From Octopus sinensis (taxonomy: Eukaryota): a DNA stretch of 64,000 nt. The stretch lies in contig NW_021831985.1 in assembly GCF_006345805.1 (NCBI RefSeq), positions 186,001-250,000 of the forward strand. The letters run 5' to 3'. The position numbers were made by a program, and so were the translations under genes. The notes under the pieces were generated by a model. That model had not been told where the DNA came from. It did no database searches and saw nothing but the letters and a program-made list of their open reading frames with translations. Below, piece by piece: positions 18,171-58,450 of the stretch; the first letter of the stretch is position 1; each line of letters begins with the position of its first letter.

Positions 18171-18427
18171 CGAGATAGAGAAAGAATGAAAGAGACAAAT
18201 TTCAAGACGGGGTACAATATATATATATATACACACATATATAATGAGGGTTAAGAGCTGAAAAATTAAAAGAAAATTTTATAGATGAGGTTAATAACCT
18301 TTCACTCACCTACCTACCTTGCACTGCTTCAGAAAGGGAGACAGAAATTCTATAAATATATATATATATATATGTATATATGTATATATATGTGTGATTT
18401 GCTTGCAGAGAAGAAAAAAACACTCAC

Positions 18428-20851
18428 CAGAGTCCGACTTGACATTCTTCAAGCACATATCACAAAGTTGATGTAGACAAGGTAAAAGTTTGGGGGCTTG
18501 TTCTTTGAATCCTGACCCACACATGGTACATGCCATGCCAGCCGCTTGTTGTTGTTGTTGTTGTTGAGTTAGGCTCTGATTGTTGTTGTTGTTAATATTA
18601 GTGGTTATAGCACTGCTAGTAGTAGTGGTGGTGGTAGTACTAGATGTAGTAGTTGTGGTTGTGGTGGGGGTGATGGTGCTGACAGCGGCGGTGGTAGTGG
18701 CGGTGGTGGTGGTGGTCGTCGTCGTCGTGGTAGAGTTTTGATCCTGTGGTTGTTGGGATTGATGGGGGTGGTGCCTACTGGTACTTGATCCTGCACTTTC
18801 ACCCCCATCGTCCGTCGGTTTGGCCGCAAGTGTCATTGTCAACGTCGGCGACGACAATGATGATGCTGCTGGTGGTGGTGGTGGTGGTGGTGGTAGTAAT
18901 GATGATGGTGACGATGATGATGATGATGCTGATAATTGCGACGTCGCTGACGTCGCCGACAGGAGCGAACTTGTGGACGCTGTGAACGTCGACGACGACG
19001 ACGACGACAATGCCGCTTGTTTTTGTGGTTGTGGTTGTTGCTGTTGTTGTTGTGGTGGTGGTGATTGTGCCGGTGGTGTCAACGACGGCGGCGGCGACGG
19101 CGAGCCCCTTGCTGTCAGGTCAGCAACAACTACTGCGCCCGCTCCTCCCACGACGACGACGCCTGGCGTAGTCGTAGTGTCGGCCGCCAGCACAGAAGCA
19201 CTGCAACCACCTCCTGTCACGATGATGGTGGCGGCGGCGGCGGTGGTGGTGGAGGATGTCGTTGTCGCTACGGCCGCTGCCACTGCTTTTTGTTGTTGTT
19301 GTTGTTGTTTGTCCACCGTGTTTTGCTGCTGTTGTTGTTGTTGATGCTGCTGCTGCTGCAGTTGCTGTTGTTGCATATCTGTACTACTGGCAGTGGAAGA
19401 TGATGTTGTTGTTGATGATGATGACGATGACGACGACGATGATGAAGCGACGGCGGCACCCGTTGCCAGGTTCGCACCTCCTCCTTCGACTCCACCATCA
19501 CCGTCCGCCATAGAAGAAGACGAAGAACAAGAAGTAGATGAGGTACGGCTTCTAATAATAGTAGTAGTAGTAGTAATAGTAGAACTATTACTACTACTAC
19601 TAGTAGTAGTAGCAGTAGTAGTACTAGTGTTGTTGTTGTTGTTAAGGTGACTACAACTACCACCACCGTTCGAGGCGGTATTGTCCTTTGCACTACAAGT
19701 TAATCCCGCCGACTTTACTATCGCCGATCCGTCAGCGGAAACAGCAGCAGCAGCAACGGTAACGCAGGAGGAGGAGGAGGCGGAGATGTTGCGGGTAGGA
19801 GTGGCGTCGCTGTTGATAGTGCTGGTGGTGGCAGTGGTAGCGGTGTTGTCGTCGACGACGGCGGCGACAGAAGTAGAAGAAGAAGAGGAGGAGGAGGAGG
19901 CAAGGGAAGAGGCAGCCGTGTCGACAGTGATGGCGCTTATTATGCTGCTGCCGACGACGGAGGTGGCGACGCCAGAGGAGTCGGAGTGTGTGACAGTGGT
20001 GTCAGTGGTGAGCGAGGAAAGGGATGAGGAGGCAGAGTCGGTAGTGGTGGGAGCGGCGGAGGTAATACTGGCGGTGGTAGCGGCAAGAGAGGAGGAAGAG
20101 GAAGAGGAAAAGGCAGAGGAAGAAGCAGCGACTGCGTTATTTTTGTTGATGATGGTGTGGACGGGGGCAGAAGCGGAGGAGGAGGAGGAAGCGGAAGGGG
20201 AAGAGTCAGCAGTGACTGCGTTGTTGTTGATGTTGTTGACGGCGGTAAGAGAGGAAGGAGAAGGGAGAGAAGTGGGAGGGGAATGGTTAGTGGAGGAGTG
20301 AGAGTGAGAGGAAGATGCAGCGACCGCAGCGTTGTTGATGATAGCGGTGGCGGCGACGATCGCCGAAGACGAGGTGGTGGCAGGGGAAGAGGAAGTGACA
20401 GCTAGAGCGGTGTCGGCGTTGGTAGCGACGACATGAGGGGGGGAATCGGCGGAAGCGGAGGAGGAGGAGGAAGAAGAAGAGGAGAAGGTTGAGGCACGGG
20501 AAGAGGAAGTGTTATGAGTGATGGTTGTAGTAGCAGTGGTGGTGGTGTTGGCGGCGGTGGTGGTAGTGTCATCGCCGTCGATGTTGTTTATGGTGGTGGC
20601 GGTGGCGGCGGCGGTGGCAGAGGCTGCAACGGCGGTAGCACCTTGTGTTTCTTGTGGTTGTCGTGATGTCGTTACGGCAGCGGCGGCGGCGATCGACACA
20701 CGAGAGAAGTTATTTTCACTATCGGCATTGCTTTCATCACCACCACCAACAACAACACAACCACCATCGCTCACTTTTCTCGACATTGTCGTCTCATCAT
20801 AAGAAGTTCTTACACCGCCGGTCGACATACCATTATTGATGTTGTTATCAT

Positions 20852-20912
<61 letters not shown>

Positions 20913-21491
20913 GTTGTTGTTATTATCATCAGAAATAACATCATTTTCTTCTTCATCTTCCATACTACTGCGACCTCGTTGTTGTTGTTGTTGTTGGTTA
21001 TTATGAAAGTGTTTATTATTATCGGTAATGCTTACAGTCGAGATCGAACTAGTTAACAGATGATTATTGTTGCTGTCGTCGTCGTCAGTATTATTATCAA
21101 CAGAATCGGTGGTCATTGCACCAGTTTCGACACTCTCCCTACAAGCTGCTGATGATGATGTTGACATGTCATCATAACAATCTGTCGTTTTATTAGTATT
21201 ATTACTAATCATGCTGTCTCTGGAATTTACAGGTTCGCTTCTCCGTCGCTTCGGTGCCACTGGTTCATCGTCTTCGTCTTCGTCGTCATTACTTGCTGCT
21301 GCTGTTATCACCCCGGGGCCACTGTTGTTGTTATCGTTTGTTTTCGTGGCCTCTGTATTTATGATAACATTGTCATCATCATCGTTGCTGTTGTTGTTAT
21401 TACTAATGGCCTCTTTGGTGGTGGAATAACTATCTTCGGACGATAACGACGGCATAGGTTTACCACCAAGATCGCCGTCATCATGATCCAT
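18428..21491 (-). CDS. TRIM33: First coding exon (1021 codons + 1 nt) of a TIF1-family TRIM E3 ligase/transcription cofactor (TRIM24/28/33, bonus-like): very long low-complexity N-terminus plus partial C3HC4 RING
   Basis: Uninterrupted 3-kb ORF ending in [28 protein letters not shown]. The 8-residue [14 protein letters not shown] spacing matches TRIM24 ([23 protein letters not shown], from memory) rather than TRIM2/3/56. Canonical donor CTG|GTGAGT at 18428/18427. In-frame TAA just upstream of the ATG. All internal repeats are trinucleotide (frame-preserving), unlike the dinucleotide repeats in the flanks. The symbol stands for the invertebrate co-orthologue; only the RING is visible. Confidence 0.75.
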
Positions 21492-21515
21492 CTTCTTCTT
21501 GTTGGATTATAAAAT

Positions 21516-26372: not shown

Positions 26373-26954
26373 AAGGCAGCAAGCTGGCAGAATGGTTAGC
26401 ATGCCGGGTGAAATGCTAAGCGGTATTTCGTCTGCCGTTATGTTCTGAGTTCAAATTCCACTGAGGTCGACTTTGCCTTTCATCCTTTTAAGGTCAATAA
26501 AATAAGTACCAGTTACCTCACTGGGGTCAATGTAATCGACTTAATCCGATTGTTTGTCCCCTCTGTGTTTAGCCCCTTGTGGGTAGTAAAGAAATAGGTA
26601 TTTCGTCTGCTGTTATGTTCTGAGTTCAAATTCCGCCGAGGTCGACTTTGCCTTTCATCCTTCTAAGGTCAATAAATTAAGTACCAGTTACGCACTGGGG
26701 TCAATGTAATCGACTTAATCCAATGGTTTGTCCCCTCTGTGTTTAGCCCCTTGTAGGTAGTAAAGAAATAGGTATTTCGTCTGCTGTTACGTTCTGAGTT
26801 CAAATTCCGCCGAGGTCGACTTTGCCTTTCATCCTTTCGGGGTCGATAAATTCAGTACCAGTTACGCACTGGGGTCGATATGATCAACTTAATCCATCTG
26901 TCTGTCCTTGTTTGTCCTCTCTGTGTTTAGCCCCTTGTGGGTAATAAAGAAATA
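26373..26954 (+). mobile_element. SINE family 1 trimer (one head plus two headless units) with 15-bp TSD
   Basis: Units restart at ggtatttcgtc at 26597 and 26771; flanks ggtatagatcatact (26358) and ggtatggatcatact (26955). Confidence 0.85.
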
Positions 26955-27369
26955 GGTATGGATCATACTGTTTATCCTTTTCATCATAAAATACAAATGT
27001 GGCTTGTGAAATCTCCATTCAGGTGATTTTCCTCCCGCTTCACCGCCAATCCATCACAAGGTTATCCATTTACAGCTGAATGGACTAGAGCAGCCGGAAA
27101 TGATGTATTTTACTCAAGAACACAACACACAGGCAATCTGGGAATTGAAACGATGATCTTGCAATCATGGGTACAACACCCTAACCACCAGGCCATGCTG
27201 GTACACACTCAGATATCCTAAACCACAGAAAGGCTACTCAACTAACACTAAGTTACAAATAGACAAGCTCCAACCTCTCTCTACTAATATAGTCTCTTCA
27301 TCAGTGCTGGATAGACTCATACCTCTACTCAGGCACACTCTGTCCAGTTACCCATGTTCTGCGCTAACC

Positions 27370-30369: not shown

Positions 30370-31366
30370 ATATATATATATATATACACACAGAGGTGGG
30401 TACCGTTAATCGAGAAGTTAACTTCGTTCATCGTTAATCTGTAAATTATTTGAAAATGTAACAGAGGTTTACTTTAACTTTTATTGAAAAAAAGGCATAA
30501 CTACAGTTTGATACCTCATCAACATTGTTGCCTCAACTTCCAGAAAAATCAATACTTTTTAACGAAACTTTCACCAAATAATTGATTATATCCTCTACAT
30601 TGAGTGTATTTAAAGATTTGCTGAAAAAACTTTCTTGAGGGGTTGGGGAGAGGAGTTTTGGAAAATTCACAGGACGCGATGTTTTCCCCCTCAAAATTTA
30701 CTGGAAAATGGGTATTTTTTAATGAAATTTTATACAAATACCTTTCAAACGGTGTAGATTATGATTACAAAGAAACTTATAGATAACAGTTTTGGAAGGA
30801 GGCAGGAAGGGAGGAGTTTCTGGAAAACGGAGTTTCAGATCAGACAGCTCATATAAGTTGGAATTTCTCCATTTTGACAGGGATTCTTTCCAATGCTTTT
30901 CACCAAATTCTTCAAAGTGATGATAGGCATCTTTTCCCATAGAAAAACAAAATATATTTTGAATTTTTTTTTTCACTTCCACCACCCCAGTGTCAACTTT
31001 AAGGTTGTACCCTGTGAAATTTATAGTTTAGCGTTTGTGAAATGACCTGTTCATTGTAGGTTTCTAAATAAAGATCCATTTATTTTGTCTCTTCATTGAC
31101 TTCTATTGTTTTGTATGTTTTTACTATTTTATAAAATTTGTTATAGTAATATATTTGTCTGTATGTGTTTGTTCCACATTAGTTTTTACAGATGTACTTT
31201 ATGAAGCCATTGATTTCTACACAGAGAATCAATATGGGTTACATATTTCAGTATTATGTTTACCTGCCATGTATTTGTGTATACCATTAATACATTTGTG
31301 CTTGTGGTTGTATGTATTCATATATAAGTTTATATGTAAATTTATGTATTCATGTGTGTGTGTATG

Positions 31367-31666
31367 TGTGAAAAGGGGGTGTCTGTCTCCAAAACACCAA
31401 AGTTGAGTAACATTTTCATGCTTGGATTTGTAAACTATAAGAATAATCAATCCAATAAATTTCCTAAATTCAGCAGAATCTATTTCTATTCACTTATCTT
31501 TATAGACCCAAGTTCCTTCAGCATTTGTCCATATTTGGATTATTTCCAAGAAATTTGGCTTCATGAACTATATAAATGATGAAAGAGTGGAATGACAAGA
31601 TATACTCGCAAAATGGGAAGTTCCAGGCTGTTGATGTAGGATGGAGTTCTTCTTGTGTTCTTTCGA
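31367..31666 (-). pseudogene. piggyBac (PGBD4-like) transposase remnant, segment downstream of the satellite
   Basis: Translates QPGTSHFASISCHSTLSSFI*FMKPNFLEIIQIWTNAEGTWVYKDK*IEIDSAEFRKFIGLIILIVYKSKHENVTQLWCFGDRHPLF, matching the piggyBac pattern PG......S...F..F....L..I..WTN.EG....W.......EL..FIGL.IL.GVYKS..E.V..LW...GRP.F. Confidence 0.85.
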
Positions 31667-34600
31667 TTGCATTCTTCCTGTGTCCTTTCAGTTTCAGGCT
31701 TATCCTTCAAATAATGCTTTGCATTCTTCATGTGTACCTTCAGTTTCATTCTTCCTGTGTCCTTTCAGTTTCAGACTTATCCTTCGAATAATACTTTGCA
31801 TTCTTCCTGTGTACCTTCAGTTTCATTCTTCCTGCGTCCTTTCAGTTTCAGACTTATCCTTTGAATAATACTTTCCATTCTTCCTGTGTCCTTTCAGTTT
31901 CATTCTTCCTGCGTCCTTTCAGTTTCAGACTTCTTATACTTTGAATAATACTTTGCATTCTTCCTGTGTCCTTTCAGTTTCATTCTTCCTGCGTACTTTC
32001 AGTTTCAGACTTATCCTTCGAATAATACTTTGCATTCTTCCTGTGTTCTTTCAGTTTTAGACTTATCCCTCGAATAATCCTTTGCATTCTTCCTGTGCCC
32101 TTTCAGTTTCAGACTTATCCTTTGAATAATGCTTTGCATTCTTCCTGTGTCCCTTCAGTTTCATTCTTCCTGTGTCCTTTCAGTTTCAGACTTATCCTTT
32201 GAATAATGCATTGCATTCTTCCTGTGTCCTTTCAGTTTTAGACTTATCTTTTGAATAATGCATTGCATTCTTCCTGTGTCCTTTCAGTTTTAGACTTACC
32301 TTTTGAATAATGCATTGCATTCTTCCTGTGTCCTGTCAGTTTTAGACTTATCTTTTGAATAATGCATTGCATTCTTCCTGTGTCCTTTCAGTTTTAGACT
32401 TATCCTTCGAATAATACTTTGCATTCTTCCTGTGTCCTTTCAGTTTCATTCTTCCTGTGTCCTTTCAGTTTCAGACTTATCCTTTGAATAATACTTTGCA
32501 TTCTTCCTGTGTCCTTTCAGTTTTATTCTTCCTGCGTCCTTTCAGTTTCAGACTTATCCTTTGAATAATACTTTGCATTCTTCCTGTGTCCTTTCAGTTT
32601 CAGACTTATCCTTTGAATAATGCATTGCATTCTTCCTGTGTCCTTTCAGTTTTAGACTTATCTTTTGAATAATGCATTGCATTCTTCCTGTGTCCTTTCA
32701 GTTTTAGACTTATCTTTTGAATAATGCATTGCATTCTTCCTGTGTCCTTTTAGTTTCATTCTTCCTGTGTCCTTTCAGTTTCAGACTTATCTTTCGAATA
32801 ATGCATTGCATTCTTCCTGCGTCCTTTAAGGTTTAGACTTATCCTTTGAATAATACTTTGCATTCTTCCTGTGTCCTTTCAGTTTCATTCTTCCTGTGTC
32901 CTTTCAGTTTCAGACTTATCCTTTGAATAATACTTTGCATTCTTCCTGTGTCCTTTCAGTTTCAGACTTTTCCTTTGAATAATACTTTGCATTCTTCCTG
33001 TGTCCTTTTAGTTTCATTCTTCCTGTGTCCTTTCAGTTTCATTCTTCCTGCATCCTTTCAGTTTTAGACTTATCCTGCGAATAATACTTTGCATTCTTCT
33101 TGTGTCCTTTCAGTTTCATTCTTCCTGTGCCCTTTCAGTTTCAGACTTATTCTTCGAATAATTCTTTGCATTCTTCCTGTGCCCTTTCAGTTTCAGACTT
33201 ATCCTTCGAATAATACTTTGCATTCTTCCTGTGTCCTTTCAGTTTCATTCTTCCTGCATCCTTTCAGTTTTAGACTTATCCTTCGAATAATACTTTGCAT
33301 TCTTCTTGTGTCCTTTCAGTTTCATTCTTCCTGTGCCCTTTCAGTTTCAGACTTATTCTTCGAATAATTCTTCGCATTCTTCCTGTGCCCTTTCAGTTTC
33401 AGACTTATCCTTCGAATAATACTTTGCATTCTTCCTGTGTCCTTTTAGCTTCATTCTTCCTGCGTCCTTTCAGTTTCATTCTTCCTGTGTCCTTTCAGTT
33501 TCAGACTTATCCTTCGAATAATGCATTGCATTCTTCTTGTGCCCTTTCAGTTTCATTCTTCCTGCGTCCTTTCAGTTTCAGACTTCTTATCCTTCGAATA
33601 ATACTTTGCATTCTTCCTGTGTCCCTATAGTTTCATTCTTCCTGTGTCCTTTCAGTTTCAGACTGATCCTTTGAATAATACTTTGCATTCTTTTTGTGTC
33701 CTTTCAGTCTCAGAATTATCCTTTGAATAATACTTTGCATTCTTTTTGTGTCTTTTCAGTCACAGACTTATTCCTTGAATAATACTTTGCATTCTTCTTG
33801 TGCCCTTTCAGTTTCAGACTTATCCTTTGAATAATACTTTGCATTCTTCCTGTGTCCTTTTAGTTTCATTCTTCCTGTGTCCTTTCAGTATCAGATTTCT
33901 TATCCTTTGAATAATACTTTGCATTCTTCCCGTGTCCTTTCAGTTTCATTCTTCCTGTGTCCTTTCAGTTTCAGACTTATCCTTTGAATAATGCTTTGCA
34001 TTCTTCCTGTGTCCTTTTAGTTTCATTCTTCCTGTGCCCTTTCAGTTTCAGACTTATCCTTTGAATAATGCATTGCATTCTTCCTGTGTCCTTTCAGTTT
34101 TAGACTTATACTTCGAATAATGCTTTGCATTCTTCCTGTGTCCTTTCAATTTCAGACTTATCCTTCGAATAATACTTTGCATTCTTCCTGTGTCCTTTCA
34201 GTTTCAGACTTATACTTCGAATAATGCTTTGCATTCTTCCTGTGTCCTTTCAGTTTCAGACTTATCCTTTGAATAATACTTTGCATTCTTCCTGTGTCCT
34301 TTCAGTTTCATTCTTCCTGCGTCCTTTCAGTTTTAGACTTATCCTTCGAATAATACTTTGCATTCTTCCTGTGTCCTTTCAGTTTCAGACTTATCCCTTG
34401 AATAATACTTTGCATTCTTCCTGTGTCCTTTTAGTTTCATTCTTCCTGTGTCCTTTCAGTTTCAGACTTATCTTCGAATAATGCATTACATTCTTCCGGT
34501 GTCCTTTCAGTTTCAGACTTATCCTTTGAATAATACTTTGCATTCTTCCTGTGTCCTTTTAGTTTCATTCTTCCTGTGTCCTTTTAGTTTCATTCTTCCT

Positions 34601-37600
34601 GTGTCCTTTCAGTTTCAGACTTATCCTTTGAATAATGCTTTGCATTCTTCCTGTGTCCTTTAAGTTTCAGACTTATTCTTCGAATAATATTTTGCATTCT
34701 TCCTGTGTCTTTCATTTCAGTTTCAGACTTAGCCTTCAAATAATACCTTGCATTCTTCCTGTGTTCTTTCAGTTTTAGACTTATCCTTCGAATAATGCTT
34801 TGCATTCTTCCTGTGTCCTTTCAGTTTCATTCTTCCTGTGTCCTTTCAGTTTCAGACTTATCCTTCGAATAATATTTTGCATTCTTCCTGTGTCCTTTCA
34901 GTTTCAGACTTATCCTTTGAATAATACTGCATTCTTCCTGTGTCCTTTCAGTTTCAGACTTATCCTTCGAATAATGCTTTGCATTCTTCCTGTGTCCTTT
35001 CAGTTTTAGAATTATCCTTTGAATAATGCATTGCATTCTTCCTGGGTCCTTTCAGTTTCATTCTTCCTGCGTCCTTTCAGTTTCAGACTTATCCTTCGAA
35101 TAATACTTTGCATTCTTCCTGTGTCCTTTCAGTTTCATTCTTCCTGTGTCCTTTCAGTTTCAGACTTATCCTTTGAATAATACTTTGCATTCTTCCTGTG
35201 TCCTTTCAGTTTCAGACTTATCCTTTGAATAATGCATTGCATTCTTCCTGTGTCCTTTCAGTTTCAGACTTATCCTTTGAATAATACTTTGCATTCTTCC
35301 TGTGTCCTTTTAGTGTCATTCTTCCTGTGTCCTTTCAGTTTCAGACTTATTTTTCGAATAATGCATTGCATTCTTCCTGTGTCCTTTCAGTTTCAGACTT
35401 ATCCTTTGAATAATACTTTGCATTCTTCCTGTGTCCTTTCAGTTTCATTCTTCCTGTGTCTTTTCAGTTTCAGACTTATTCTTCGAATAATACTTTGCAT
35501 TCTTCCTGTGTCCTTTCAGTTTCATTCTTCCTGTGCCCTTTCAGTTTCAGACTTATTCTTCGAATAATTCTTCGCATTCTTCCTGTGCCCTTTCAGTTTC
35601 AGACTTATCCTTCGAATAATACTTTGCATTCTTCCTGTGTCCTTTTAGCTTCATTCTTCCTGCGTCCTTTCAGTTTCATTCTTCCTGTGTCCTTTCAGTT
35701 TCAGACTTATCCTTCGAATAATGCATTGCATTCTTCTTGTGCCCTTTCAGTTTCATTCTTCCTGCGTCCTTTCAGTTTCAGACTTCTTATCCTTCGAATA
35801 ATACTTTGCATTCTTCCTGTGTCCCTATAGTTTCATTCTTCCTGTGTCCTTTCAGTTTCAGACTGATCCTTTGAATAATACTTTGCATTCTTTTTGTGTC
35901 CTTTCAGTCTCAGAATTATCCTTTGAATAATACTTTGCATTCTTTTTGTGTCTTTTCAGTCACAGACTTATTCCTTGAATAATACTTTGCATTCTTCTTG
36001 TGCCCTTTCAGTTTCAGACTTATCCTTTGAATAATACTTTGCATTCTTCCTGTGTCCTTTTAGTTTCATTCTTCCTGTGTCCTTTCAGTATCAGATTTCT
36101 TATCCTTTGAATAATACTTTGCATTCTTCCCGTGTCCTTTCAGTTTCATTCTTCCTGTGTCCTTTCAGTTTCAGACTTATCCTTTGAATAATGCTTTGCA
36201 TTCTTCCTGTGTCCTTTTAGTTTCATTCTTCCTGTGCCCTTTCAGTTTCAGACTTATCCTTTGAATAATGCATTGCATTCTTCCTGTGTCCTTTCAGTTT
36301 TAGACTTATACTTCGAATAATGCTTTGCATTCTTCCTGTGTCCTTTCAATTTCAGACTTATCCTTCGAATAATACTTTGCATTCTTCCTGTGTCCTTTCA
36401 GTTTCAGACTTATACTTCGAATAATGCTTTGCATTCTTCCTGTGTCCTTTCAGTTTCAGACTTATCCTTTGAATAATACTTTGCATTCTTCCTGTGTCCT
36501 TTCAGTTTCATTCTTCCTGCGTCCTTTCAGTTTTAGACTTATCCTTCGAATAATACTTTGCATTCTTCCTGTGTCCTTTCAGTTTCAGACTTATCCCTTG
36601 AATAATACTTTGCATTCTTCCTGTGTCCTTTTAGTTTCATTCTTCCTGTGTCCTTTCAGTTTCAGACTTATTCTTCGAATAATGCATTACATTCTTCCGG
36701 TGTCCTTTCAGTTTCAGACTTATCCTTTGAATAATACTTTGCATTCTTCCTGTGTCCTTTTAGTTTCATTCTTCCTGTGTCCTTTTAGTTTCATTCTTCC
36801 TGTGTCCTTTCAGTTTCAGACTTATCCTTTGAATAATGCTTTGCATTCTTCCTGTGTCCTTTAAGTTTCAGACTTATTCTTCGAATAATATTTTGCATTC
36901 TTCCTGTGTCCTTTCAGTTTCAGACTTAGCCTTCAAATAATACCTTGCATTCTTCCTGTGTTCTTTCAGTTTTAGACTTATCCTTCGAATAATGCTTTGC
37001 ATTCTTCCTGTGTCCTTTCAGTTTCATTCTTCCTGTGTCCTTTCAGTTTCAGACTTATCCTTCGAATAATATTTTGCATTCTTCCTGTGTCCTTTCAGTT
37101 TCAGACTTATCCTTTGAATAATACTTTGCATTCTTCCTGTGTCCTTTCAGTTTCAGACTTATCCTTCGAATAATGCTTTGCATTCTTCCTGTGTCCTTTC
37201 AGTTTTAGAATTATCCTTTGAATAATGCATTGCATTCTTCCTGGGTCCTTTCAGTTTCATTCTTCCTGCGTCCTTTCAGTTTCAGACTTATCCTTCGAAT
37301 AATACTTTGCATTCTTCCTGTGTCCTTTCAGTTTCATTCTTCCTGTGTCCTTTCAGTTTCAGACTTATCCTTTGAATAATACTTTGCATTCTTCCTGTGT
37401 CCTTTCAGTTTCAGACTTATCCTTTGAATAATGCATTGCATTCTTCCTGTGTCCTTTCAGTTTCAGACTTATCCTTTGAATAATACTTTGCATTCTTCCT
37501 GTGTCCTTTTAGTGTCATTCTTCCTGTGTCCTTTCAGTTTCAGACTTATTTTTCGAATAATGCATTGCATTCTTCCTGTGTCCTTTCAGTTTCAGACTTA

Positions 37601-40024
37601 TCCTTTGAATAATACTTTGCATTCTTCCTGTGTCCTTTCAGTTTCATTCTTCCTGTGTCTTTTCAGTTTCAGACTTATTCTTCGAATAATACTTTGCATT
37701 CTTCCTGTGTCCTTTTAGTTTCAGACTTCTTATCCTTTGAATAATACTTTGCATTCTTCCTGTGTCCTTTCAGTTTCAGACTTATCCTTCGAATAATATT
37801 TTGCATTCTTCCTGTGTCCTTTCAGTTTCAGACTTATCCTTTGAATAATGCTTTGCATTCTTCCTGTGTCCTTTTAGTTTCAGACTGAATGATAGAGTGG
37901 GGAAGAAGACGATCGACATGATGCAGGAAGTATTGGTCGGAGTAGGAGCAGAGGACCCAGTGAGGGGCAGCTGGTATGTTCCCAAATCAAAGAGCGGGAT
38001 TGTATGGTGTGACGCCAGTAGCATCACAACAGAGGTTGTCTTAGAAGTGGGAGGTGTAATGGTGGAAGATGCAGCCTGGCTCAGGAAGACGGATGACTGC
38101 AATCATATCAATGTGGCGGAGTTGGATGCCGTGTTGAAGGGGGTGAACCTAGCCTTAACTTTGGGGTTGCACACCATAGAAATCAGGACTGATTCGGCCA
38201 CTGTACTTGGTTGGGTGACAGCAGTCATCACCAATGAGTGGAGTGTGCGGACCAAAGGGGCTGCAGAGATACTGGTAAAGCGTCGATTGGGAATACTGTG
38301 TGAACTAACCACTGAGTTCAATCTGAAGCTGAGCGTGATCTTTGTGCCTTCCAAGAACAGGGCAGACGTCCTGACCAGGGTAAAGTGAGCCTGGTTGCAG
38401 GTGCCAGAGGATGTGAAGCAGGCTGTAGCTGCAGTATGCCGTCTGAGTGACTCAGAGTTGAGGAGACTGCATACCATGCATCACATGGGTGTGGACAGGA
38501 CAGGACATTGTTCATAGCCAGAAAAGTTGGCTCCGATGTAACAAGACAGAGCATGCAGAGAGTGGTTAGCAGTTGTGACAGGTGCCAGTCCATCGACCCT
38601 GCTCCGGGCGTACATGAAGCGGGAAGTATTCCAGTGGACCATGACTGGAAACGACTGGCGGTGGGCATAACACACTACCGGCAGGGGACATACCTCTCAA
38701 TAGTTGACTGCGGACCGGGGCGGTTGGCCATATGGAGGGAGATGAAGATGGGGACTGCAGAAGAAATTGCGAAAGTATTGAATGAGATATTCCTGGAACG
38801 AAGCCCCGTGGATGAACTGCTTCTGGATAATGGCACTGCATTTCGCTTGGATGTGCTGAAAGAAATGCTTGATGGGTGGAAGGTCAACCGCTTCTTCAGG
38901 GCGGCATACCGGCCAAGTGGAAATGGGGTGGTGGAAAGGCATCATCGTACAATCAAGGCCATGGCAGAGTGGGGTCACATTTCACCAATCGAGGCTGTAT
39001 TTTGGTACAATATGTCGCCCAGATCAGGACAGGCTGAGGAGTCGGTGCCACACAGGGCGATATTCAGGTACGAGTGGAGGCACCCGTGTACTGCATCAAT
39101 GTGACCTGGGGCAGAGGAAGAGCACGCCTTTCAGTTTCAGACTTATCCTTCGAATATTACTTTGCATTCTTCCTGTGTCCTTTCAATTTCAGACTTATCC
39201 TTCGAATAATGCTTTGCATTCTTCCTGTGTCCTTTCAGTTTCAGACTTATCCTTCAAATAATTCTTTGCATTCTTCCTGTGTCCTTTCAGTTTCAGACTT
39301 ATCCTTCGAATAATACTTTGCATTCTTCCTGTGTCCTTTCAGTTTCAGACTTATCCTTTGAATAATACTTTGCATTCTTCCTGTGTCATTTCAGTTTCAG
39401 ACTTATCCTTCGAATAATACTTTGCATTCTTCCTGTGTCCTTTCAGTTTCAAACTTATCCTTCGAATAATACTTTGCATTCTTCCTGTGTCCTTTCAGTT
39501 TCAGACTTATCCTTCGGATAATATTTTGCATTCTTCCTGTGTCCTTTCAGTTTCAGACTTATCCTTCAAATAATACTTTGCATTCTTCCTGTGTCCTTTC
39601 AGTTTCAGACTTATCCTTCGAATAATGCTTTGCATTCTTCCCCTACCCTTTCAGTTTCAGACTTATCCTTCGAATAATATTTTGCATTCTTCCTGTGTCC
39701 TTTCAGTTTCAGACTTATCCTTTGAATAATGCTTTGCATTCTTCCTGTGTCCTTTCAGTTTCAGACTTATCCTTCGAATAATATTTTGCATTCTTCCTGT
39801 GTCCTTTCGTTTTCAGACTTATCCTTCGAATAATACTTTGCATTCTTCCTGTGCCCTTTCAGTTTCATTCTTCCTGTGTCCTTTCAGTTTCAGACTTATC
39901 CTTCGAATAATACTTTGCATTCTTCCTGTGTCCTTTCAGTTTCAGACTTATCCTTCGAATAATACTTTGCATTCTTCCTGTGTCCTTTCAGTTTCAGACT
40001 TATCCTTCGAATAATACTTTGCAT
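31667..40024. repeat. Satellite array of a 52-bp unit (cattcttcctgtgtcctttcagtttcagacttatccttcgaataatactttg) with interspersed 25-bp subunits and a 2.2-kb higher-order duplication; interrupted at 37887-39126
   Basis: Directly visible; about 7.1 kb of repeat, roughly 135 52-bp equivalents by arithmetic. Confidence 0.97.
37887..39126 (+). mobile_element. Ty3/Gypsy LTR retrotransposon pol fragment (RNase H + integrase), no LTRs, pseudogenised
   Basis: RNase H WCDASS..NHINVAELDAVLKG..TDS; integrase HH(MG)..CDRC zinc finger and core IVDCG..LLDNGTAF..GNGVVERHHRTIK; stop at ~38386 and a frameshift at ~38500. Confidence 0.9.
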
Positions 40025-40228
40025 GCATTATTGAAGGGTTTAAAGAATCATTTGTGTCAGCATTGTTGTCATCATAACCGATTCTGAATAAGTAATACTG
40101 ACATGATCACTTTCGTTATCATCTTCAGGAAAAGAAGATTCATCACAAATAATTTTTTCCCATTCTTTATGTAAGCTGGATAACGATTGTGAAATCTCTT
40201 CAAGGCTTAGCCTTTGATGCTTTGATAT
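40025..40228 (-). pseudogene. piggyBac transposase acidic N-terminus, upstream of the satellite
   Basis: (M>I)SKHQRLSLEEISQSLSSLHKEWEKIICDESSFPEDDNESDHVSITYSES, one frameshift, then GYDDNNADTNDSLNPSIMHAK running straight into the repeat unit YYSKDKSETERTQEEC. Possible TTAA|CCTTT 5' terminus at 40541-40545. Confidence 0.7.
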
Positions 40229-40599
40229 GTCATGGAAGGATTACAACTATAAAACCAAAGGACAAATGAATAGTTGGCAATCTGTCACTTTTATACTTGT
40301 TGATTTATGTTTCATTATTCCTTCAAGGATGATGCAATACTAATTGTTTGTTTCATAAAGATGATGCACTAAATAGTAATATTGCATCACCTTCAGATGT
40401 CTTAGTAAATGTTATTAGAGATCTTTGTAAAACATTATGGGATGAGGTTGTGAAAGCTGACCTCAAGATGCTGAGAAATGTGTTGTTATTGGCAAGCTGT
40501 TCTTGTGTAATTTATTTTATTGATACCTGTTGGATCAAAGGTTAAACTGACTTTTGTGGGATTTGAACTCACAATGCAGAGGAACATAACTAAACAGAA

Positions 40600-40870
40600 C
40601 AAAGCATTTAGTCTGGCGCTCCATCCATAGGCAGAATTTTTGGAACAACAGTCCTTCAAAGTTCCATACCTCATGGAAAAGGAAAAGTGAGGTGGGCAGG
40701 TTTCCTTCATTTTGTTTTTAATCTTTTTTTTTTGTTTTATACATTTGAGAGGAGGTGAGATAAGCTCAGCAAGCTGCAGGGAGCAGAGGCCATATAATAG
40801 CAGTAGAAATGGCAGAAAGAGGGAACACAGAATGTCTGGGTATCTGAGGGTGGAGCACATCTGTAAGTAA
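40600..40870 (-). mobile_element. CR1/Jockey-group LINE 3' remnant
   Basis: LLYGLCSLQLAELISPPL and LPTSLF..WNFEGLLFQK resemble the RT C-terminal Y.G.CS.ELA.L+PPPL and LP.S+FP motifs. Confidence 0.4.
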
Positions 40871-40947: not shown

Positions 40948-41547
40948 AAGGCAGTGAGATGGCAGAAACATTAGCACGCCGAGTGAAATGCTTAGCGGTA
41001 TTCGTCTGCCGCTATGTTCTGAGTTCAAATTCTGCCGAGGTCGACTTTATCTTTCATCCTTTCGGGGTCAATAAATTAAGTACCAGTAACGCACTGGGGT
41101 CAATGTAATCGACTTAATCCCTTTATCTGAACTTGTTTGTCCCTCCATGTTTAGCCCCTAGTGGGTAGTAAAGAAATAGGTATTTCTTCTGCCGCTATGT
41201 TCTGAGTTCAAATTCCACCGAGGTCGACTTTGCCTTTCATCCTTTCGGGGTCGATTAGATAAGTACCAGTTACACACTGGGGTCAATATAATCAACTTAA
41301 TCCATTTGTCTGTCCTTGTTTGTCCCCTCTATGTTTAGCCCCTTGTGGGTAGTAAAGAAATAGGTATTTCTTCTGCTGCTATGTTCTGAGTTAAAATTCC
41401 ACCAAGGTCGACTTTGCCTTTCATCCTTTCGGGGGTCGATTAAATAAGTACCAGTTATGCACTGGGGTTGATATAATCGAATTAATCCATTTGTCTTTCC
41501 TTGTTTGTCCCCTCTGTGTGTAGCCCCTTGTGGGCAGTAAAGAAATA
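40948..41547 (+). mobile_element. SINE family 1 trimer
   Basis: Units restart at ggtatttc at 41179 and 41363; aactgtgtggaac on both flanks (40928, 41551). Confidence 0.85.
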
Positions 41548-46116: not shown

Positions 46117-47780
46117 CACTACCATCAGAAATTAATTAGCACCCTTGATTTGCTCTTCACTCAAGGTATTTGCTGTCACCTAGTGGCCATATCTCGAACT
46201 ATTGCTTTGTTGTGAGTTCACTGTTGCGCAGAACGATGACGTAACTTTGTTTGCAGAGCAGTTTGAGAGTCTACAGCCTAATGATGTTGACATAGCAGTG
46301 CAACAACAACTTGGAGTGCGGATGCAGACAAATCTTCCTTTGTTTAATAGATATAGGTAGCGCCTCGCAAGGACCGAAATCACACCGTACTAAGTTTTCT
46401 CATCGCGTAAGACGTTTTGAACAGCTCGTAGGTTAATTGATTTGTGTATTTGCAAGATTTTTTTTCCTCACAAATTCTCCTACACTCTGCTTGATGATGT
46501 CACTTCCGGTTCACAAAACTTTCTGTTATACATCAAATAAGGTGAGAAATTCTGCTTTCTTTCTTTTTTGTTTAATGAATAATAACTCATAGCAGTTTTG
46601 TTATAGCATAACATTATTCAAATGAATAGTTTTAATGAAAATAACTGGTTTTTATCGTTCATTCCTAGATGGGCCCAAGACCTCGCATGATCTTGGAGAG
46701 ACGGTACGAGGCTCTCTCGTGGCGTGGGAAGCTGTCGGAGGCTGCAATAGCCAGAAAACTTGGTGTAGCCAGGCGCACAATTCAGTGCTTATTTAAGAAA
46801 TATGAAGAAACCGGATCAGCAGCTGACAAAAAGGGTAGGGGACGGAAGAGGCTGACGACCCAGCGGGAGGACCGGATGCTGATCCGAAAGTTACTGTACA
46901 ACCGAAGGGCAACGAGCCAGCAACTGGCGGAGGAGATGCAAAAGATGACAGGGAAGCAGTTGTCTACAACTACCGTCAAGACCAGATTACTGGAAGCTGG
47001 TCTAAAATCCTGTAGGGCCGCTCCTTACAGCCCACAAGACATGGACTGTGCAGCAGTAGTGGACAGTGATGTTCACTGACGAGTCGCAATTCAGTCTCGT
47101 CAGTGACAAGCCTGTCCATGTGCGACACCGCAGGGGTGAGCGCTTCAACAAAGACTGCATTGCTCCCACCATGAAGCATGGTGGGGGTGGTCTGATGGTG
47201 TGAGGGGCGTTCAGCTACAGTGGTGTTGGGCGGCTCTATGCCGTCGAAGGCAACATCAACGCAGCAAAGTACGTTGAGATAGTACGGGATACCTCTTTGG
47301 TGGCGAGGAGTACGTGCTCCAGCAGGACAACGCGCCTTCCCACACAGCGAAGCTCACAACCAGTTTCGTCAAGGACCATGGGGTGACGGTCATGGACTGG
47401 CCTGGCCAGTCACCTGACCTGAACCCTATTGAGAACCTCTGGAGTCGATTGGGTAGGGATTTGAATGTGCAGCAATACAGGAACCGACACAAGCTGTTTG
47501 GGGCACTTCTTGCTGCATGGAAGGCCATCCCTGCACAGTACCTGCAGGCACTCATAGACAGCATGCCGACCCGCATAGCAGCTGTCATTGCTGCCAAAGG
47601 AGGAGCAACAAGATATTGACTAAATTTCACGATTAATAACAATTATGTGGTGTGCTGGGATATGTTTTAATAAATTTTTGATTAAAAACGAGTTCGTTTC
47701 TGATAATAAGTTAATTAAATTAAGAAAATGTAAGAAAATGTAGAAATTTGAGAAGTGCTAATTAATTTCCGACGCAAGTG
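46117..47780 (+). mobile_element. Tc1-like DD34E transposon, 1.66 kb, relatively young but internally deleted
   Basis: TIRs cactaccatcagaaattaattagcac / gtgctaattaatttccgacgcaagtg with TA flanks. Confidence 0.9.
46669..47619 (+). pseudogene. Tc1 transposase pseudogene
   Basis: Paired-like HTH (AIARKLGVARRTIQ), GRGRKR AT-hook, FTDES, QQDNAPSH, SPDLNPIENLW with D-E spacing 34; deletions, frameshifts and stops. Confidence 0.9.
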
Positions 47781-56185: not shown

Positions 56186-58450
56186 CTAGCAGTTAAGCCC
56201 GGTTTCACCTGGTCTGTTTGGATGATGTGGCTGTGATCATCTTCGGTTAGGCATAATCTATAATGGTTTTTCTCAACCTTATCATTTCGGGTCCCCTGTT
56301 TCGAGTGGAGCCTTCAGCTGTATGAAAATTTCTTCCCCCACCACTGTCAAAAAACAGCTTCAGGAGTTGTGAAGAACGAATTTGTACGTAGTCTGTTTCT
56401 GAGAGCTTTTCTATTGGACCTCTGTCTAATCATTAAAACATTGATTTAATTATGAACATAGAAAGAAATTATACATTCATCCCTATTTTTGTAAGCAGTT
56501 GTATCCGTAAAAATTTCGTTTGCAGACAGCAGAAATTGAAAGAAGATATATAAAATGGACGTGTGTGTGTATGTGTGTGTGTGTGTATCTGTGTGTGCGT
56601 GCTTGTGCGTGTGTATGTGAGAGAGAAAGAGGGTGAAAAAGAGAGATAGAGTGAGTGAGTGAAGGTGTGTCATTGAGTTACATTGGCTGACACGGTGACT
56701 ATGAAGCTTTTGAGACAACAGATGACTGGGGTGATTTGAAAGATGTGAAGAAATGCCATCTTTTCAGTGGAGCACTTCTTTGTAGGCAACGTTTCTCATT
56801 CTCCCTTCTGAATTACAAATGTATAGACTTTGTGGCCTGCCAAAAAAGGAGCATCCAACGTAAAGTTGACCGTGGGAGAACACTTGTTCTGTGAAATTTA
56901 AACCAACCATTTGCAATGATTGACCCTGTGCCTTATTTATTGTCATTGCAAAGGAGAGTTTAATAGGAAATTGAAGCTGCTTAAACTTGTAGATCATATC
57001 GGAGGGAGTGAAGGACAGTGGAGTTATAAGAACATCTTGACCAGCAGCCGGTCCATTCAAGATGGTTGCCTGCAGAACTCGGGAGTATAATTTTTTGATT
57101 ATCATCCGTGTGCCTTTACACATTATTGGAGCATCCAAATTCCACAGCAGCATGAAGGGTGCGTCAACCTTAAGATGGAGTTTGTGAGGTGGAAGTCTTG
57201 CAGGCATTTGGGAATTAAGGAATTCAGTTGTGAAAACAGTCATATCATCTGGGTTATCATGCATGTCAACGGACTTGAAGGAGAGTTTTTCTCCAGGAAG
57301 CAGATTGAGAAGTTTATTATTGATAGCGGTGACTGTTTTATTGTGAGGCGCCAAAATTGCTCTTCCTTGTAGGCAAGTTGTGTCAAGTCTTTGGTTTGCA
57401 ATGTCAGGAAAAACTGAAGAAACCAAATCATCCACGGTAGGTACAAAGTTACCAAATGGTAAATGAATGAAACCATCAGTATCGCCAGCTGCAGTTCCAT
57501 TACCAACATTGAGAAGCTGCACTGAGAATGTGGCCGTGTTTTCATCGCCATGCATCTGAACTCTCATGTTCGTAGTCAGGTGAAGTTTCTCGATGTGGTG
57601 CCATAAGTAGGATGATTTTATGGAAGCATTTACCTCGTCAGCTCTTGTTCCTCGTGGAATGACAGGTAGAGTTTGTCGGAAGTCGCCAGCAAGCAGAACA
57701 GTCACTCGACCCATCATTCTCATATTGCGTCTCAGGTCTTGAAGAGACCGATCGAGCACCTCAGAAGCCGCCTTATGACTCATGGTTGCCTTATCCCAAA
57801 TGATAAGGCGGCACTCAGTGAGAAGATTTCCCATGGCTGAGCCATGACTAACATTGCAATTTGGATTTTCCTGTTAGGTCAAGTCTAGTGGTAATTTGAA
57901 GGCTGGGTGTGCTGTATGACCGCCATGCAGTAGAGTTGCCACAATGCCGCTGGATGCAACTGCTATGGCAATCCAATTTTCCTGGCAAATTTTGGTGAGC
58001 AGGAGGTTCATGAAAAAGGTTTTTCTGATTCTGCTGGGAGCATCCAAGAAAGTAGAAATTGAAAGAAGATATATGAAATGGACGTGTGTGTGTGAGTTTT
58101 CCCGGCTAATTTGGCTAGAGTTTTGCAGTCAGCACGAGGTGGTTTGTGTTTATCTCTCAAGTCGAATTGTTGTTAATTTGTCTGCAATAGCAATGCCCGG
58201 ACAAGTGAAAATATCTTCATTTTTTACTCCTTTACCTGCAGTAAAAGGACTCAGGAGCCCTTCTCCATAAAAAATTGTTACTTTTCAGTAACTAAGGGGA
58301 CTAGGAAAAAATACAAACTGCATTCCAATCTATGTACCCGTCTCCATATGTGTGCCATTTTTCACACAAATCCACCCAGCCGTTTGGCTGTAAACCTCAA
58401 GACAAGAAAGAATACAACGAATGCCCATGTCCAATTTATATTATAGAAGA
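56186..58450 (-). mobile_element. Helitron, non-autonomous, 2.27 kb
   Basis: A|TC 5' end at 58450; 3' CTAG|T at 56189-56186 preceded by GC hairpin gacc(a)ggtgaaaccgggc (56197-56214); internal PIF1-type helicase. Confidence 0.85.
56764..58050 (-). pseudogene. Helitron PIF1-family (SF1B) helicase fragment
   Basis: FLDAP..RKTF (degenerate Walker A), LIIWDKATM, LLAGDFRQTLPV, LTTNMRV, QFPIKLSFAMTINKAQGQSL, FSHGQLYV; no Rep domain, upstream stop. Confidence 0.9.

What the first reader, a model, noticed from the sequence alone, without database searches (positions are those of the whole stretch)
31367..40228. A 52-bp satellite born in situ from inside a piggyBac transposase gene
Seen: on the minus strand the transposase N-terminus (40228-40025, ...LNPSIMHAK) runs directly into the repeat unit (YYSKDKSETERTQEEC). 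At the far end, 8.3 kb away, the last unit runs into CNRKNTRR..QPGTSHF..WTNAEG..FIGLIILIVYKSKHENVTQLW. The unit is bounded by a 6-bp direct microhomology (ATGCAA) exactly 52 bp apart, so collapsing the array to one unit gives ...HAKYYSKDKSETERTQEECNRK... in one frame. Known: the downstream peptide matches PGBD4-like piggyBac transposases, and TE-derived satellites are described, mostly from non-coding parts or MITEs. Inference: this is the founder locus, with the seed, the initiating microhomology and both native flanks preserved, which is rarely visible.
Basis: partly seen in the sequence, partly recalled or inferred. Interest (0 to 1): 0.88.

Follow-up and report, generated by a model that had tools for sequence, protein, structure and literature searches.

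The report
Tandem array born inside dead piggyBac
A 52-base stretch from the start of a dead piggyBac-type transposase remnant has been copied head-to-tail about 150 times at this one place in a 2.7-Gb animal genome. It is a clean but ordinary example of a tandem array arising in place from a transposon, with no sign of spread or function.

Summary
Window 31670-40021 (read on the minus strand) holds an 8,352-bp array: 102 units of 52 bp, 47 truncated 25-bp units and a few 50-56-bp variants. A 1,242-bp retroelement fragment (37886-39127) interrupts it.

Reduced to one unit, the locus aligns without a gap across the unit to 10 other genomic copies (81-86% identity). Each of those copies carries exactly one unit. 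It also aligns colinearly to real piggyBac transposase reading frames in the same genome (DDE_Tnp_1_7, E 1e-57), where the unit corresponds to the N-terminal codons ...EQYVSRDKQEV...

Every unit-to-unit junction in the 2.72-Gb assembly lies in this array (105 of 105 for 52-mers, 48 of 48 for 25-mers). In-place origin at a unique locus is therefore well supported.

Four points are overstated:
- The host is a truncated, frameshifted pseudogene fragment, not a gene.
- The array is a single-locus array, not a dispersed satellite.
- The 10 copies represent only two independent lineages.
- The ATGCAA microhomology exists here but not in the paralogs, so it cannot be shown to predate the array.

One 2.2-kb block inside the array is duplicated almost perfectly. 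It may be very recent or an assembly artefact. Tandem repeats derived from transposons, including from their reading frames, are already described. Interest is modest.

The parts
40022..40228 (-). Upstream native flank: the decayed N-terminal coding region of a piggyBac-type transposase (..HKEWEKIICDESSFPEDDNESDHV.. then, after a frameshift, ..DDNNADTNDSLNPSIMHAK).
   Evidence: Translation. tblastn of real piggyBac reading frames from the same genome gives 41-47% identity over 32-39 aa, E 2e-5 to 5e-5, in the correct order. DNA alignment is colinear with L041/L048.
39128..40021 (-). 5' sub-array: about 17 units, almost all clean 52-mers, with one 25-mer. Units are on average 2.5% from the consensus.
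37886..39127 (+). Foreign insert splitting the array: an internal pol fragment of a retroelement (RNase H, then an integrase-like region). It is flanked by an apparent 16-bp duplication of unit sequence (GTCTGAAACTGAAAGG / GTCTGAAACTAAAAGG).
   Evidence: Sequence and translation. Pfam RVT_3 30.5 bits and RNase_H 26.9 bits, both above threshold; rve is weak at 16.5 bits. The family is abundant, with best copies 92-95% identical.
31670..37885 (-). 3' sub-array: 86 exact 52-mers mixed with 46 25-mers (the last 25 nt of the unit) and 55-bp variants. These form 77-bp (52+25), 129-bp (52+52+25) and 181-bp higher-order periods.
33298..37696 (-). Two adjacent blocks of about 2.2 kb inside the 3' sub-array (37696-35498 and 35497-33298). 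They differ by one substitution and three small indels.
   Evidence: Offset scan and global alignment.
31355..31669 (-). Downstream native flank: the rest of the N-terminal region and the first ~60 residues of the piggyBac DDE domain (QQPGTSHF..WTNAEG..FIGLIILIVYKSKHENVTQLWCFGDRHPLF), with two in-frame stops. Transposase homology ends at a CA-rich run (about 31355).
   Evidence: Pfam DDE_Tnp_1_7 E 0.005, 16.5 bits, profile positions 6-63 of 349. 57% identity over 93 aa, E 4e-30, to the L041 reading frame. Alignment.
30990..31354 (-). Non-coding tail shared with the paralogous copies. Homology of the window copy stops at 30990, while the C4 copy and the nine-copy lineage continue to match each other beyond that point. 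The window copy is therefore cut off here.
40229..40475 (-). Non-coding 5' part of the same repeated element, shared with the nine-copy lineage and with other partial copies that start at the same point.
40473..40743 (-). Separate SINE-like repeat abutting the element. It occurs on its own at many genomic sites, and in the nine-copy lineage it lies 3.1 kb away from the element.

Best explanation
A 52-bp segment of the N-terminal coding region of an old, already dead and truncated piggyBac-type (PGBD4-like) transposase remnant was duplicated in tandem at this locus. It was then amplified in place to about 7.1 kb.

Shown:
- One unit is the ancestral state.
- Both junctions are exact.
- The array is unique in the assembly.

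Inferred, in order:
1. The first duplication arose by slippage or microhomology-mediated repair between two ATGCAA hexamers 52 bp apart. These hexamers exist only in this copy.
2. Growth continued by replication slippage and unequal sister-chromatid exchange.
3. A 27-bp deletion between TG dinucleotides made a 25-bp variant. That variant spread together with its neighbours as 77-bp and 129-bp higher-order units.
4. A retroelement pol fragment inserted and split the array into two sub-arrays.
5. Last, a 2.2-kb block was duplicated.

The array is most likely a neutral by-product with no function.
For: - A search with a unit dimer finds tandem copies only at C8456:217.6-226.0 kb. Single 44-53-bp matches occur at 10 other places.
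- The collapsed locus aligns in one match of about 1,040 bp (81-84% identity) across the unit in all 10. The multiple alignment has no gap from 40 bp before the unit to 25 bp after it.
- More intact relatives in the same genome are real piggyBac transposases (DDE_Tnp_1_7 E 1.2e-57). They align colinearly through the unit: YYSKDKSE matches YVSRDKQE.
- Junction 29-mers number 105 genome-wide and 105 in the window. The 25-mer junctions number 48 and 48.
- Units differ pairwise by 7.5%, against 14-19% between the host copy and its paralogs. The array is therefore younger than the element.
- The retro fragment is about 5-8% from its relatives. The 2.2-kb blocks differ by one substitution. This gives the order of events.
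- ATGCAA lies at both edges.
Against: - The microhomology is not present in the paralogs. It could have arisen after the array formed, or been imposed by it.
- A stronger older repeat sits next to it: an imperfect 25-nt direct repeat, GAAAGGACACAGGAAGAA + 7 nt + GAAAG(A/G)ACACAAGAAGAA, shared by all paralogs. It may have contributed to instability.
- Concerted evolution would make the array look younger than it is.
- The contig is an unplaced 327-kb scaffold. The near-identical 2.2-kb blocks differ mainly by small indels of the kind long-read errors produce, so the true length is uncertain.
- Unassembled copies of the array cannot be excluded.
Confidence: 0.85

Rival explanations
1. Assembly artefact: the array, or much of its length, comes from mis-joined or over-expanded long reads on an unplaced contig.
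For: The two 2.2-kb blocks differ by one substitution and three small indels. The three odd-length units of 50, 51 and 56 bp all lie in the second block. The contig is an unplaced 327-kb scaffold.
Against: The units carry structured, inherited variation (51 distinct 52-mers, variant classes, higher-order periods), and a retroelement insertion sits inside the array. An artefact would not produce these. Outside the 2.2-kb block the units are 5-8% diverged. At most about 2.2 kb is suspect.
Confidence: 0.1
2. The visible array is one assembled copy of a larger satellite whose other arrays are collapsed or missing from the assembly. If so, this is not necessarily the founder or the only locus.
For: Satellite arrays are commonly under-represented in assemblies (established knowledge; also stated in PMC7004042 and the Tribolium preprint listed). 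The assembly has 13,516 contigs.
Against: All 105 and 48 junction matches in 2.72 Gb lie in this array. Both flanks are the native neighbours of the unit, as expected of the site of origin. No predicted protein in the large public collection matches the array's open frame.
Confidence: 0.1
3. The array is ancestral to this element subfamily and travelled with it. The other copies collapsed to one unit.
For: None found beyond the general fact that arrays can contract.
Against: Two divergent paralog lineages have exactly one unit in perfect register, and the more distant intact piggyBac reading frames have one colinear unit-equivalent. In the intact relatives the unit is ordinary coding sequence. 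The paralogs lack the junction motif ATGCAA that every array unit carries.
Confidence: 0.02
4. The array is functional. It could be a regulatory or small-RNA-producing repeat upstream of the RING-finger gene exon at 18306-21506, or a coding repeat.
For: The array lies about 10 kb upstream of a long minus-strand open frame that ends in a RING finger, and in the same orientation. One strand is 70% purine. The antisense strand has open frames of 138-163 aa.
Against: The 52-bp unit is not a multiple of 3, and the sense strand has a stop in one of the three frames it cycles through. The antisense frames are repeat-derived, with no homologue in the protein collection. The array sits in a transposon-rich stretch. 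No conservation or expression data are available.
Confidence: 0.05

Closest known systems
Satellite and tandem repeats derived from transposon reading frames (review PMC9659126, Table 1 and section 2.2): CACTA 'Jozin' Tnp2 transposase to CficCl-61-40 satDNA in Chenopodium; L1 ORF2 to PROsat (Phodopus) and Pvc20; CR1 ORF2 to the HinfI repeat in chicken; gag to E3900 in rye
   Same: The monomer is a piece of a transposon's protein-coding region amplified head-to-tail. The transposon copy is dead.
   Different: Those are multi-locus, often high-copy satellites, recognised by similarity after they had spread. Here there is one locus and about 7 kb, with both native flanks and the single-unit state still visible in paralogs. 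The source is a piggyBac-type transposase. I found no example of that in the papers searched.
Tandem repeats amplified inside non-coding parts of transposons: Ogre 3'UTR to PisTR-A and other legume satellites (PMC7004042; PMC9659126), and central tandem repeats of DINE-1/Helitron-type elements in Drosophila (PMC9659126 Table 1)
   Same: A short stretch internal to a transposon expands within a copy of that transposon. The array is embedded in element sequence.
   Different: In those cases the short tandem repeat is a standing feature of the active element family, and many copies carry it. Here every other copy has one unit and the expansion is private to one dead copy.
Single-locus minisatellite or VNTR-type arrays seeded by slippage between short direct repeats (general model; microhomology-mediated duplication is discussed in PMC9659126 section 4 and PMC12628747 section 4)
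   Same: A unit of tens of bp, a single locus, an integer number of units plus a few shared bases at the edge, and higher-order variants produced by unequal exchange.
   Different: The 7-8 kb length is at the long end for a minisatellite. The role of the ATGCAA hexamer is inferred and not shown.

Membership tests
piggyBac / PGBD transposase (Pfam DDE_Tnp_1_7) | Match to DDE_Tnp_1_7 above the curated threshold | tested here: not met
   The window peptide scores 16.5 bits (E 0.005) against a cut-off of 22.4 and covers only profile positions 6-63 of 349. Relatives in the same genome pass easily: L042 reading frame 196 bits, E 1.2e-57.
piggyBac / PGBD transposase (Pfam DDE_Tnp_1_7) | Colinear homology to real family members | tested here: met
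   57% identity over 93 aa (E 4e-30) downstream and 41-47% over 32-39 aa upstream, in the correct order. The DNA alignment is colinear through the unit.
piggyBac / PGBD transposase (Pfam DDE_Tnp_1_7) | Catalytic DDD core and an intact reading frame | tested here: not met
   Transposase homology ends at about 31355, after roughly 60 residues of the domain, in this copy and in all 10 paralogs. Frameshifts and two in-frame stops are present.
piggyBac / PGBD transposase (Pfam DDE_Tnp_1_7) | TTAA target duplication and terminal inverted repeats at the element ends | tested here: inconclusive
   No TTAA-flanked inverted ends were seen at the homology boundaries (40475 and 30990). The 3' boundary is a truncation.
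Satellite DNA (classical sense) | Head-to-tail tandem monomers forming a long array | tested here: met
   About 160 monomers and 7.1 kb of repeat.
Satellite DNA (classical sense) | High copy number, multiple loci or heterochromatic blocks | tested here: not met
   All 105 of 105 and 48 of 48 junction matches in the 2.72-Gb assembly lie in this one array. Unassembled copies could not be tested.
Transposon-derived tandem repeat formed in place | The monomer is homologous to an internal stretch of a transposon, and other copies carry a single monomer between the same flanks | tested here: met
   All 10 paralogs have one unit, gap-free across both junctions. Intact relatives are colinear. The 10 copies amount to two independent lineages.
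Transposon-derived tandem repeat formed in place | Microhomology at the duplication breakpoints that predates the array | tested here: inconclusive
   ATGCAA is at both edges here. The paralogs have ACGTAA/ACATAA (C4, 5 of 6 self-match) or ATGTAG/ACACTA. The state of this copy before the array formed cannot be recovered.

The most novel reading that the evidence does not exclude
This could be a satellite caught at its very first stage, before any spread. It would be a private, possibly length-polymorphic array from a piggyBac transposase coding region, with the seed, breakpoints and order of later events all readable. It could become, or already be, a source of small RNAs or a length-variable modifier of the RING-finger gene about 10 kb downstream.
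Probability: 0.05. Interest if true: 0.55.

Novelty: new member of a known kind. Interest (0 to 1): 0.3.

Why it matters
The locus is a tidy worked example of how a tandem array starts. The single-unit ancestor survives in paralogs, both junctions are exact, and the later steps can be ordered: a deletion variant, higher-order units, a foreign insertion and a block duplication. It adds a piggyBac transposase coding region to the known sources of transposon-derived tandem repeats. It does not open a new question. There is no evidence of spread, function, or centromeric or regulatory use, and such private arrays are expected to be common in repeat-rich genomes assembled from long reads.

Tried and rejected
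- The Pfam scan of the flank peptides alone gave only a sub-threshold DDE_Tnp_1_7 hit. The piggyBac identity had to be established through longer relatives in the same genome.
- I first read the ~3.1-kb and ~1.5-kb extra segments in the other copies as possible introns, or as deletions in the window copy. I rejected this. The C4 copy also lacks the 1.5-kb segment. The extras contain LINE-like frames. The nine copies that carry them are 94-96% identical to each other over more than 7 kb, so they form one recently duplicated lineage with nested insertions.
- I took position 30990 for a natural element end because many matches stopped there. That was simply the end of my query. The C4 and nine-copy lineages continue beyond it, so the window copy is truncated.
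- I looked for piggyBac TTAA and inverted ends at the homology boundaries and found nothing convincing.
- A search of the large protein collection with the array's 163-aa antisense open frame found nothing. It was meant to find the array in other samples or species.
- One strand is 70% purine, but the longest pure run is 8 nt. I dropped a triplex-DNA explanation.
The organism was not verified. The SINE content and genome size look octopus-like, but that is only my recollection.
Full report
**What is there**

Tandem Repeats Finder reports overlapping arrays with periods of 52, 77, 129, 181 and 25 between 31647 and 40024. I read the minus strand and cut it after each GAATG. This gives 102 units of exactly 52 bp and 47 units of 25 bp, which are the last 25 nt of the 52-mer. 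There are also 6 units of 55 bp, one each of 50, 51, 56 and 77 bp, and one unit split by a 1,242-bp foreign insert. The array runs from 40021 to 31670, a span of 8,352 bp of which 7,110 bp is repeat. The consensus unit is CAAAGTATTATTCGAAGGATAAGTCTGAAACTGAAAGGACACAGGAAGAATG. The 52-mers are on average 95.3% identical to it, and their mean pairwise divergence is 7.5%.

Upstream...CCTTCAATAATGC|ATGCAA|AGTATT... runs into the array, and downstream the last unit reads ...GGAAGA|ATGCAA|TCGAAAGAAC.... After collapse to one unit, the frame ...NPSIMHAKYYSKDKSETERTQEECNRKNTRR... is open. The downstream transposase-like peptide (QQPGTSHF..WTNAEG..FIGLIILIVYKSKHENVTQLWCFGDRHPLF) lies in another frame and has two stops.

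**Are the flanks piggyBac, and do they belong together?**

On its own the downstream peptide gives only a sub-threshold DDE_Tnp_1_7 hit: E 0.005, 16.5 bits against a cut-off of 22.4, profile positions 6-63 of 349. The window belongs to a 2.72-Gb, 13,516-contig genome (G000, contig C8456).

A protein search of that genome found 149 relatives. Several have long open frames (L041, L042, L044, L045, L047, L048). These are real piggyBac-type transposases: the L042 reading frame scores E 1.2e-57 against DDE_Tnp_1_7. Their N-terminal sequence reads ...LELDEEWEEDSSDFFCCSEDDGESDWV...SSDDEDTQKQLSASHPIMNEQYVSRDKQEV...ECGPSHF...IRKWTNVEGQVVYKDKWKEIDHSELKKFIGLIILIGVYKSKHENVTQLWSQEDGRPIF. It is colinear with the collapsed window sequence at the protein level: 57% over 93 aa, E 4e-30 downstream, and 41-47% over 32-39 aa upstream. 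It is also colinear at the DNA level.

The start of the unit (YYSKDKSE) corresponds to YVSRDKQE. The unit is therefore native N-terminal coding sequence, just upstream of the DDE domain.

**Do other copies carry one unit?**

A search with a unit dimer found tandem copies only at this locus. It also found single 44-53-bp matches at 10 other places: C11022, C10782, C10554, C9742, C9490, C9080, three on C5 and one on C4. I fetched all 10. The collapsed window sequence aligns to each in one match of about 1,040 bp at 81-84% identity, running straight across the unit. The multiple alignment has no gap at either junction and exactly one unit in every copy.

Two caveats apply.

- **Independence.** Nine of the ten copies are 94-96% identical to each other over up to 7.2 kb, including shared nested inserts with LINE-like frames. 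They are one recently duplicated lineage. Independent witnesses are that lineage, the C4 copy, and the more distant intact relatives.
- **State of the host.** Every member of this subfamily loses transposase homology at the same CA-rich point (about 31355 in the window). All have stops or frameshifts. The host was a dead, truncated remnant before the array formed. The window copy is further cut off at 30990, where the other lineages continue.

**Is the locus unique?**

The unit-unit junction 29-mer (up to 3 mismatches) occurs 105 times in the whole genome, all on one strand. It occurs 105 times in the window. The 25-mer junction occurs 48 times in both. No array exists elsewhere in the assembly. 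Unassembled sequence cannot be judged.

**The microhomology**

ATGCAA bounds the unit in this copy. At the aligned positions, the C4 paralog has ACGTAA on the left and ACATAA on the right. The nine-copy lineage has ATGTAG or ATGTAC on the left and ACACTA, ACACAA or ACAATA on the right. The perfect hexamer pair is thus private to this copy.

This fits a story in which lineage-specific substitutions created a 6-bp direct repeat that then allowed slippage. A 6-bp shared edge is very unlikely by chance for a random duplication (4^-6). However, the state before the array is not recoverable here, so the claim stays an inference.

Next to it lies an older feature shared by all paralogs: an imperfect 25-nt direct repeat, GAAAGGACACAGGAAGAA + 7 nt + GAAAG(A/G)ACACAAGAAGAA, with 17 of 18 core positions matching in the C4 copy. 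The stretch was already internally repetitive.

**History of the array (inferred from structure)**

- The 25-bp units equal a 52-mer minus the 27 nt between two TG dinucleotides. They occur with their neighbours as 77-bp and 129-bp higher-order periods.
- A 1,242-bp fragment on the plus strand splits the array at 37886-39127. It encodes RNase H (Pfam above threshold) and a weak integrase-core match. It is flanked by an apparent 16-bp duplication of unit sequence. It belongs to an abundant family whose best copies are 92-95% identical to it.
- The 5' sub-array (17 units) is cleaner, at 2.5% from consensus with one 25-mer. The 3' sub-array is 5.1% from consensus with 46 25-mers.
- Two adjacent 2.2-kb blocks (37696-35498 and 35497-33298) differ by one substitution and three small indels. 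This is either a very recent duplication or an assembly error.
- The relative order is: divergence of the element from its paralogs (14-19%), then the array (7.5% pairwise, an underestimate if units are being homogenised), then the retro insert (about 5-8%), then the block duplication.

**Function**

Nothing points to one. The unit length is not a multiple of three. The sense strand meets a stop in one of the three frames it cycles through. The antisense open frames of 138-163 aa have no homologue in the public protein collection. The surroundings are rich in transposons.

**Comparison with what is known**

A review of transposon-derived tandem repeats (PMC9659126) states that monomers come mostly from terminal repeats, LTRs and untranslated regions. 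It also lists cases derived from reading frames: L1 ORF2, CR1 ORF2, gag, and the Tnp2 transposase of the CACTA element Jozin. Microhomology-mediated end joining and non-allelic recombination are the mechanisms proposed there and in PMC12628747. I found no piggyBac-derived case in the papers searched.

This locus is therefore a new member of a known kind. It is unusually legible, but it is a private single-locus array rather than a satellite that has spread.

**Verdict**

The in-place origin, the native flanks and the uniqueness of the locus are supported. The terms 'gene', 'satellite', 'initiating microhomology' and 'rarely visible' are overstated or unproven. Interest is modest.

Noticed in passing
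window 37886-39127 (+): A 1.24-kb internal pol fragment of a retroelement sits inside the array. It encodes RNase H and a weak integrase-like region, and has no LTR or other element ends. An apparent 16-bp duplication of unit sequence (15 of 16 matching) flanks it, which is odd for an LTR-type element. Its family has at least 580 candidate copies, the best 92-95% identical.
   Followed up: partly
window 26422-26959 and 40997-41547 (+); also L041, L043-L046, L048: A SINE-like unit of 174-183 bp with a tRNA-like box (GAGTTCAAATTCC...) occurs as short tandem arrays of three copies on both sides of the finding, in the same orientation. Similar short arrays lie within a few kb of most of the fetched piggyBac relatives. 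Tandem amplification of transposon pieces seems common in this genome.
   Followed up: no
L031-L039 (C11022, C10782, C10554, C9742, C9490, C9080, C5:115.63 Mb, C5:115.69 Mb, C5:38.50 Mb): Nine copies of a composite segment longer than 7 kb are 94-96% identical to each other. The segment combines the piggyBac remnant, LINE-like inserts and a PHD-finger frame. Two copies lie 57 kb apart in opposite orientation on C5. This looks like a recent segmental duplication or a large composite repeat.
   Followed up: partly
window 31449-30990 (-) and many genomic sites: More than 60 genomic hits begin sharply inside the transposase coding sequence, at about ..LIILIVYKSKHENVTQLW.., and share the non-coding tail. 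This sub-repeat appears to have multiplied on its own from a fragment of this element. The mechanism is unknown.
   Followed up: no
window 18306-21506 (-): A 1,066-aa open frame of very low complexity (runs of S, T, N, Q, A) ends in a RING-type zinc finger (zf-C3HC4 22.5 bits, above its threshold of 21). It is probably a host gene exon, about 10 kb downstream of the array on the same strand.
   Followed up: partly
window 56764-57873 (-); 46669-47079 (+): A PIF1-like helicase fragment (E 5e-33), probably from a Helitron, and a Tc1/mariner-type helix-turn-helix transposase N-terminus (HTH_Tnp_Tc3_2, E 1.5e-9).
   Followed up: partly
L042 (C19:15,200,046-15,210,045) 8754-7855 and 5354-4755 (-): Two near-identical piggyBac transposase open frames lie 3.4 kb apart in tandem orientation. 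They may be a local duplication of a fairly intact element.
   Followed up: no
window 31610-31690 (-) and the aligned paralogs: All family members share an imperfect 25-nt direct repeat (GAAAGGACACAGGAAGAA, 7 nt, GAAAGRACACAAGAAGAA) overlapping the 3' end of the unit. Its period is the same as that of the 25-bp variant units in the array. The more intact piggyBac relatives do not show it.
   Followed up: partly
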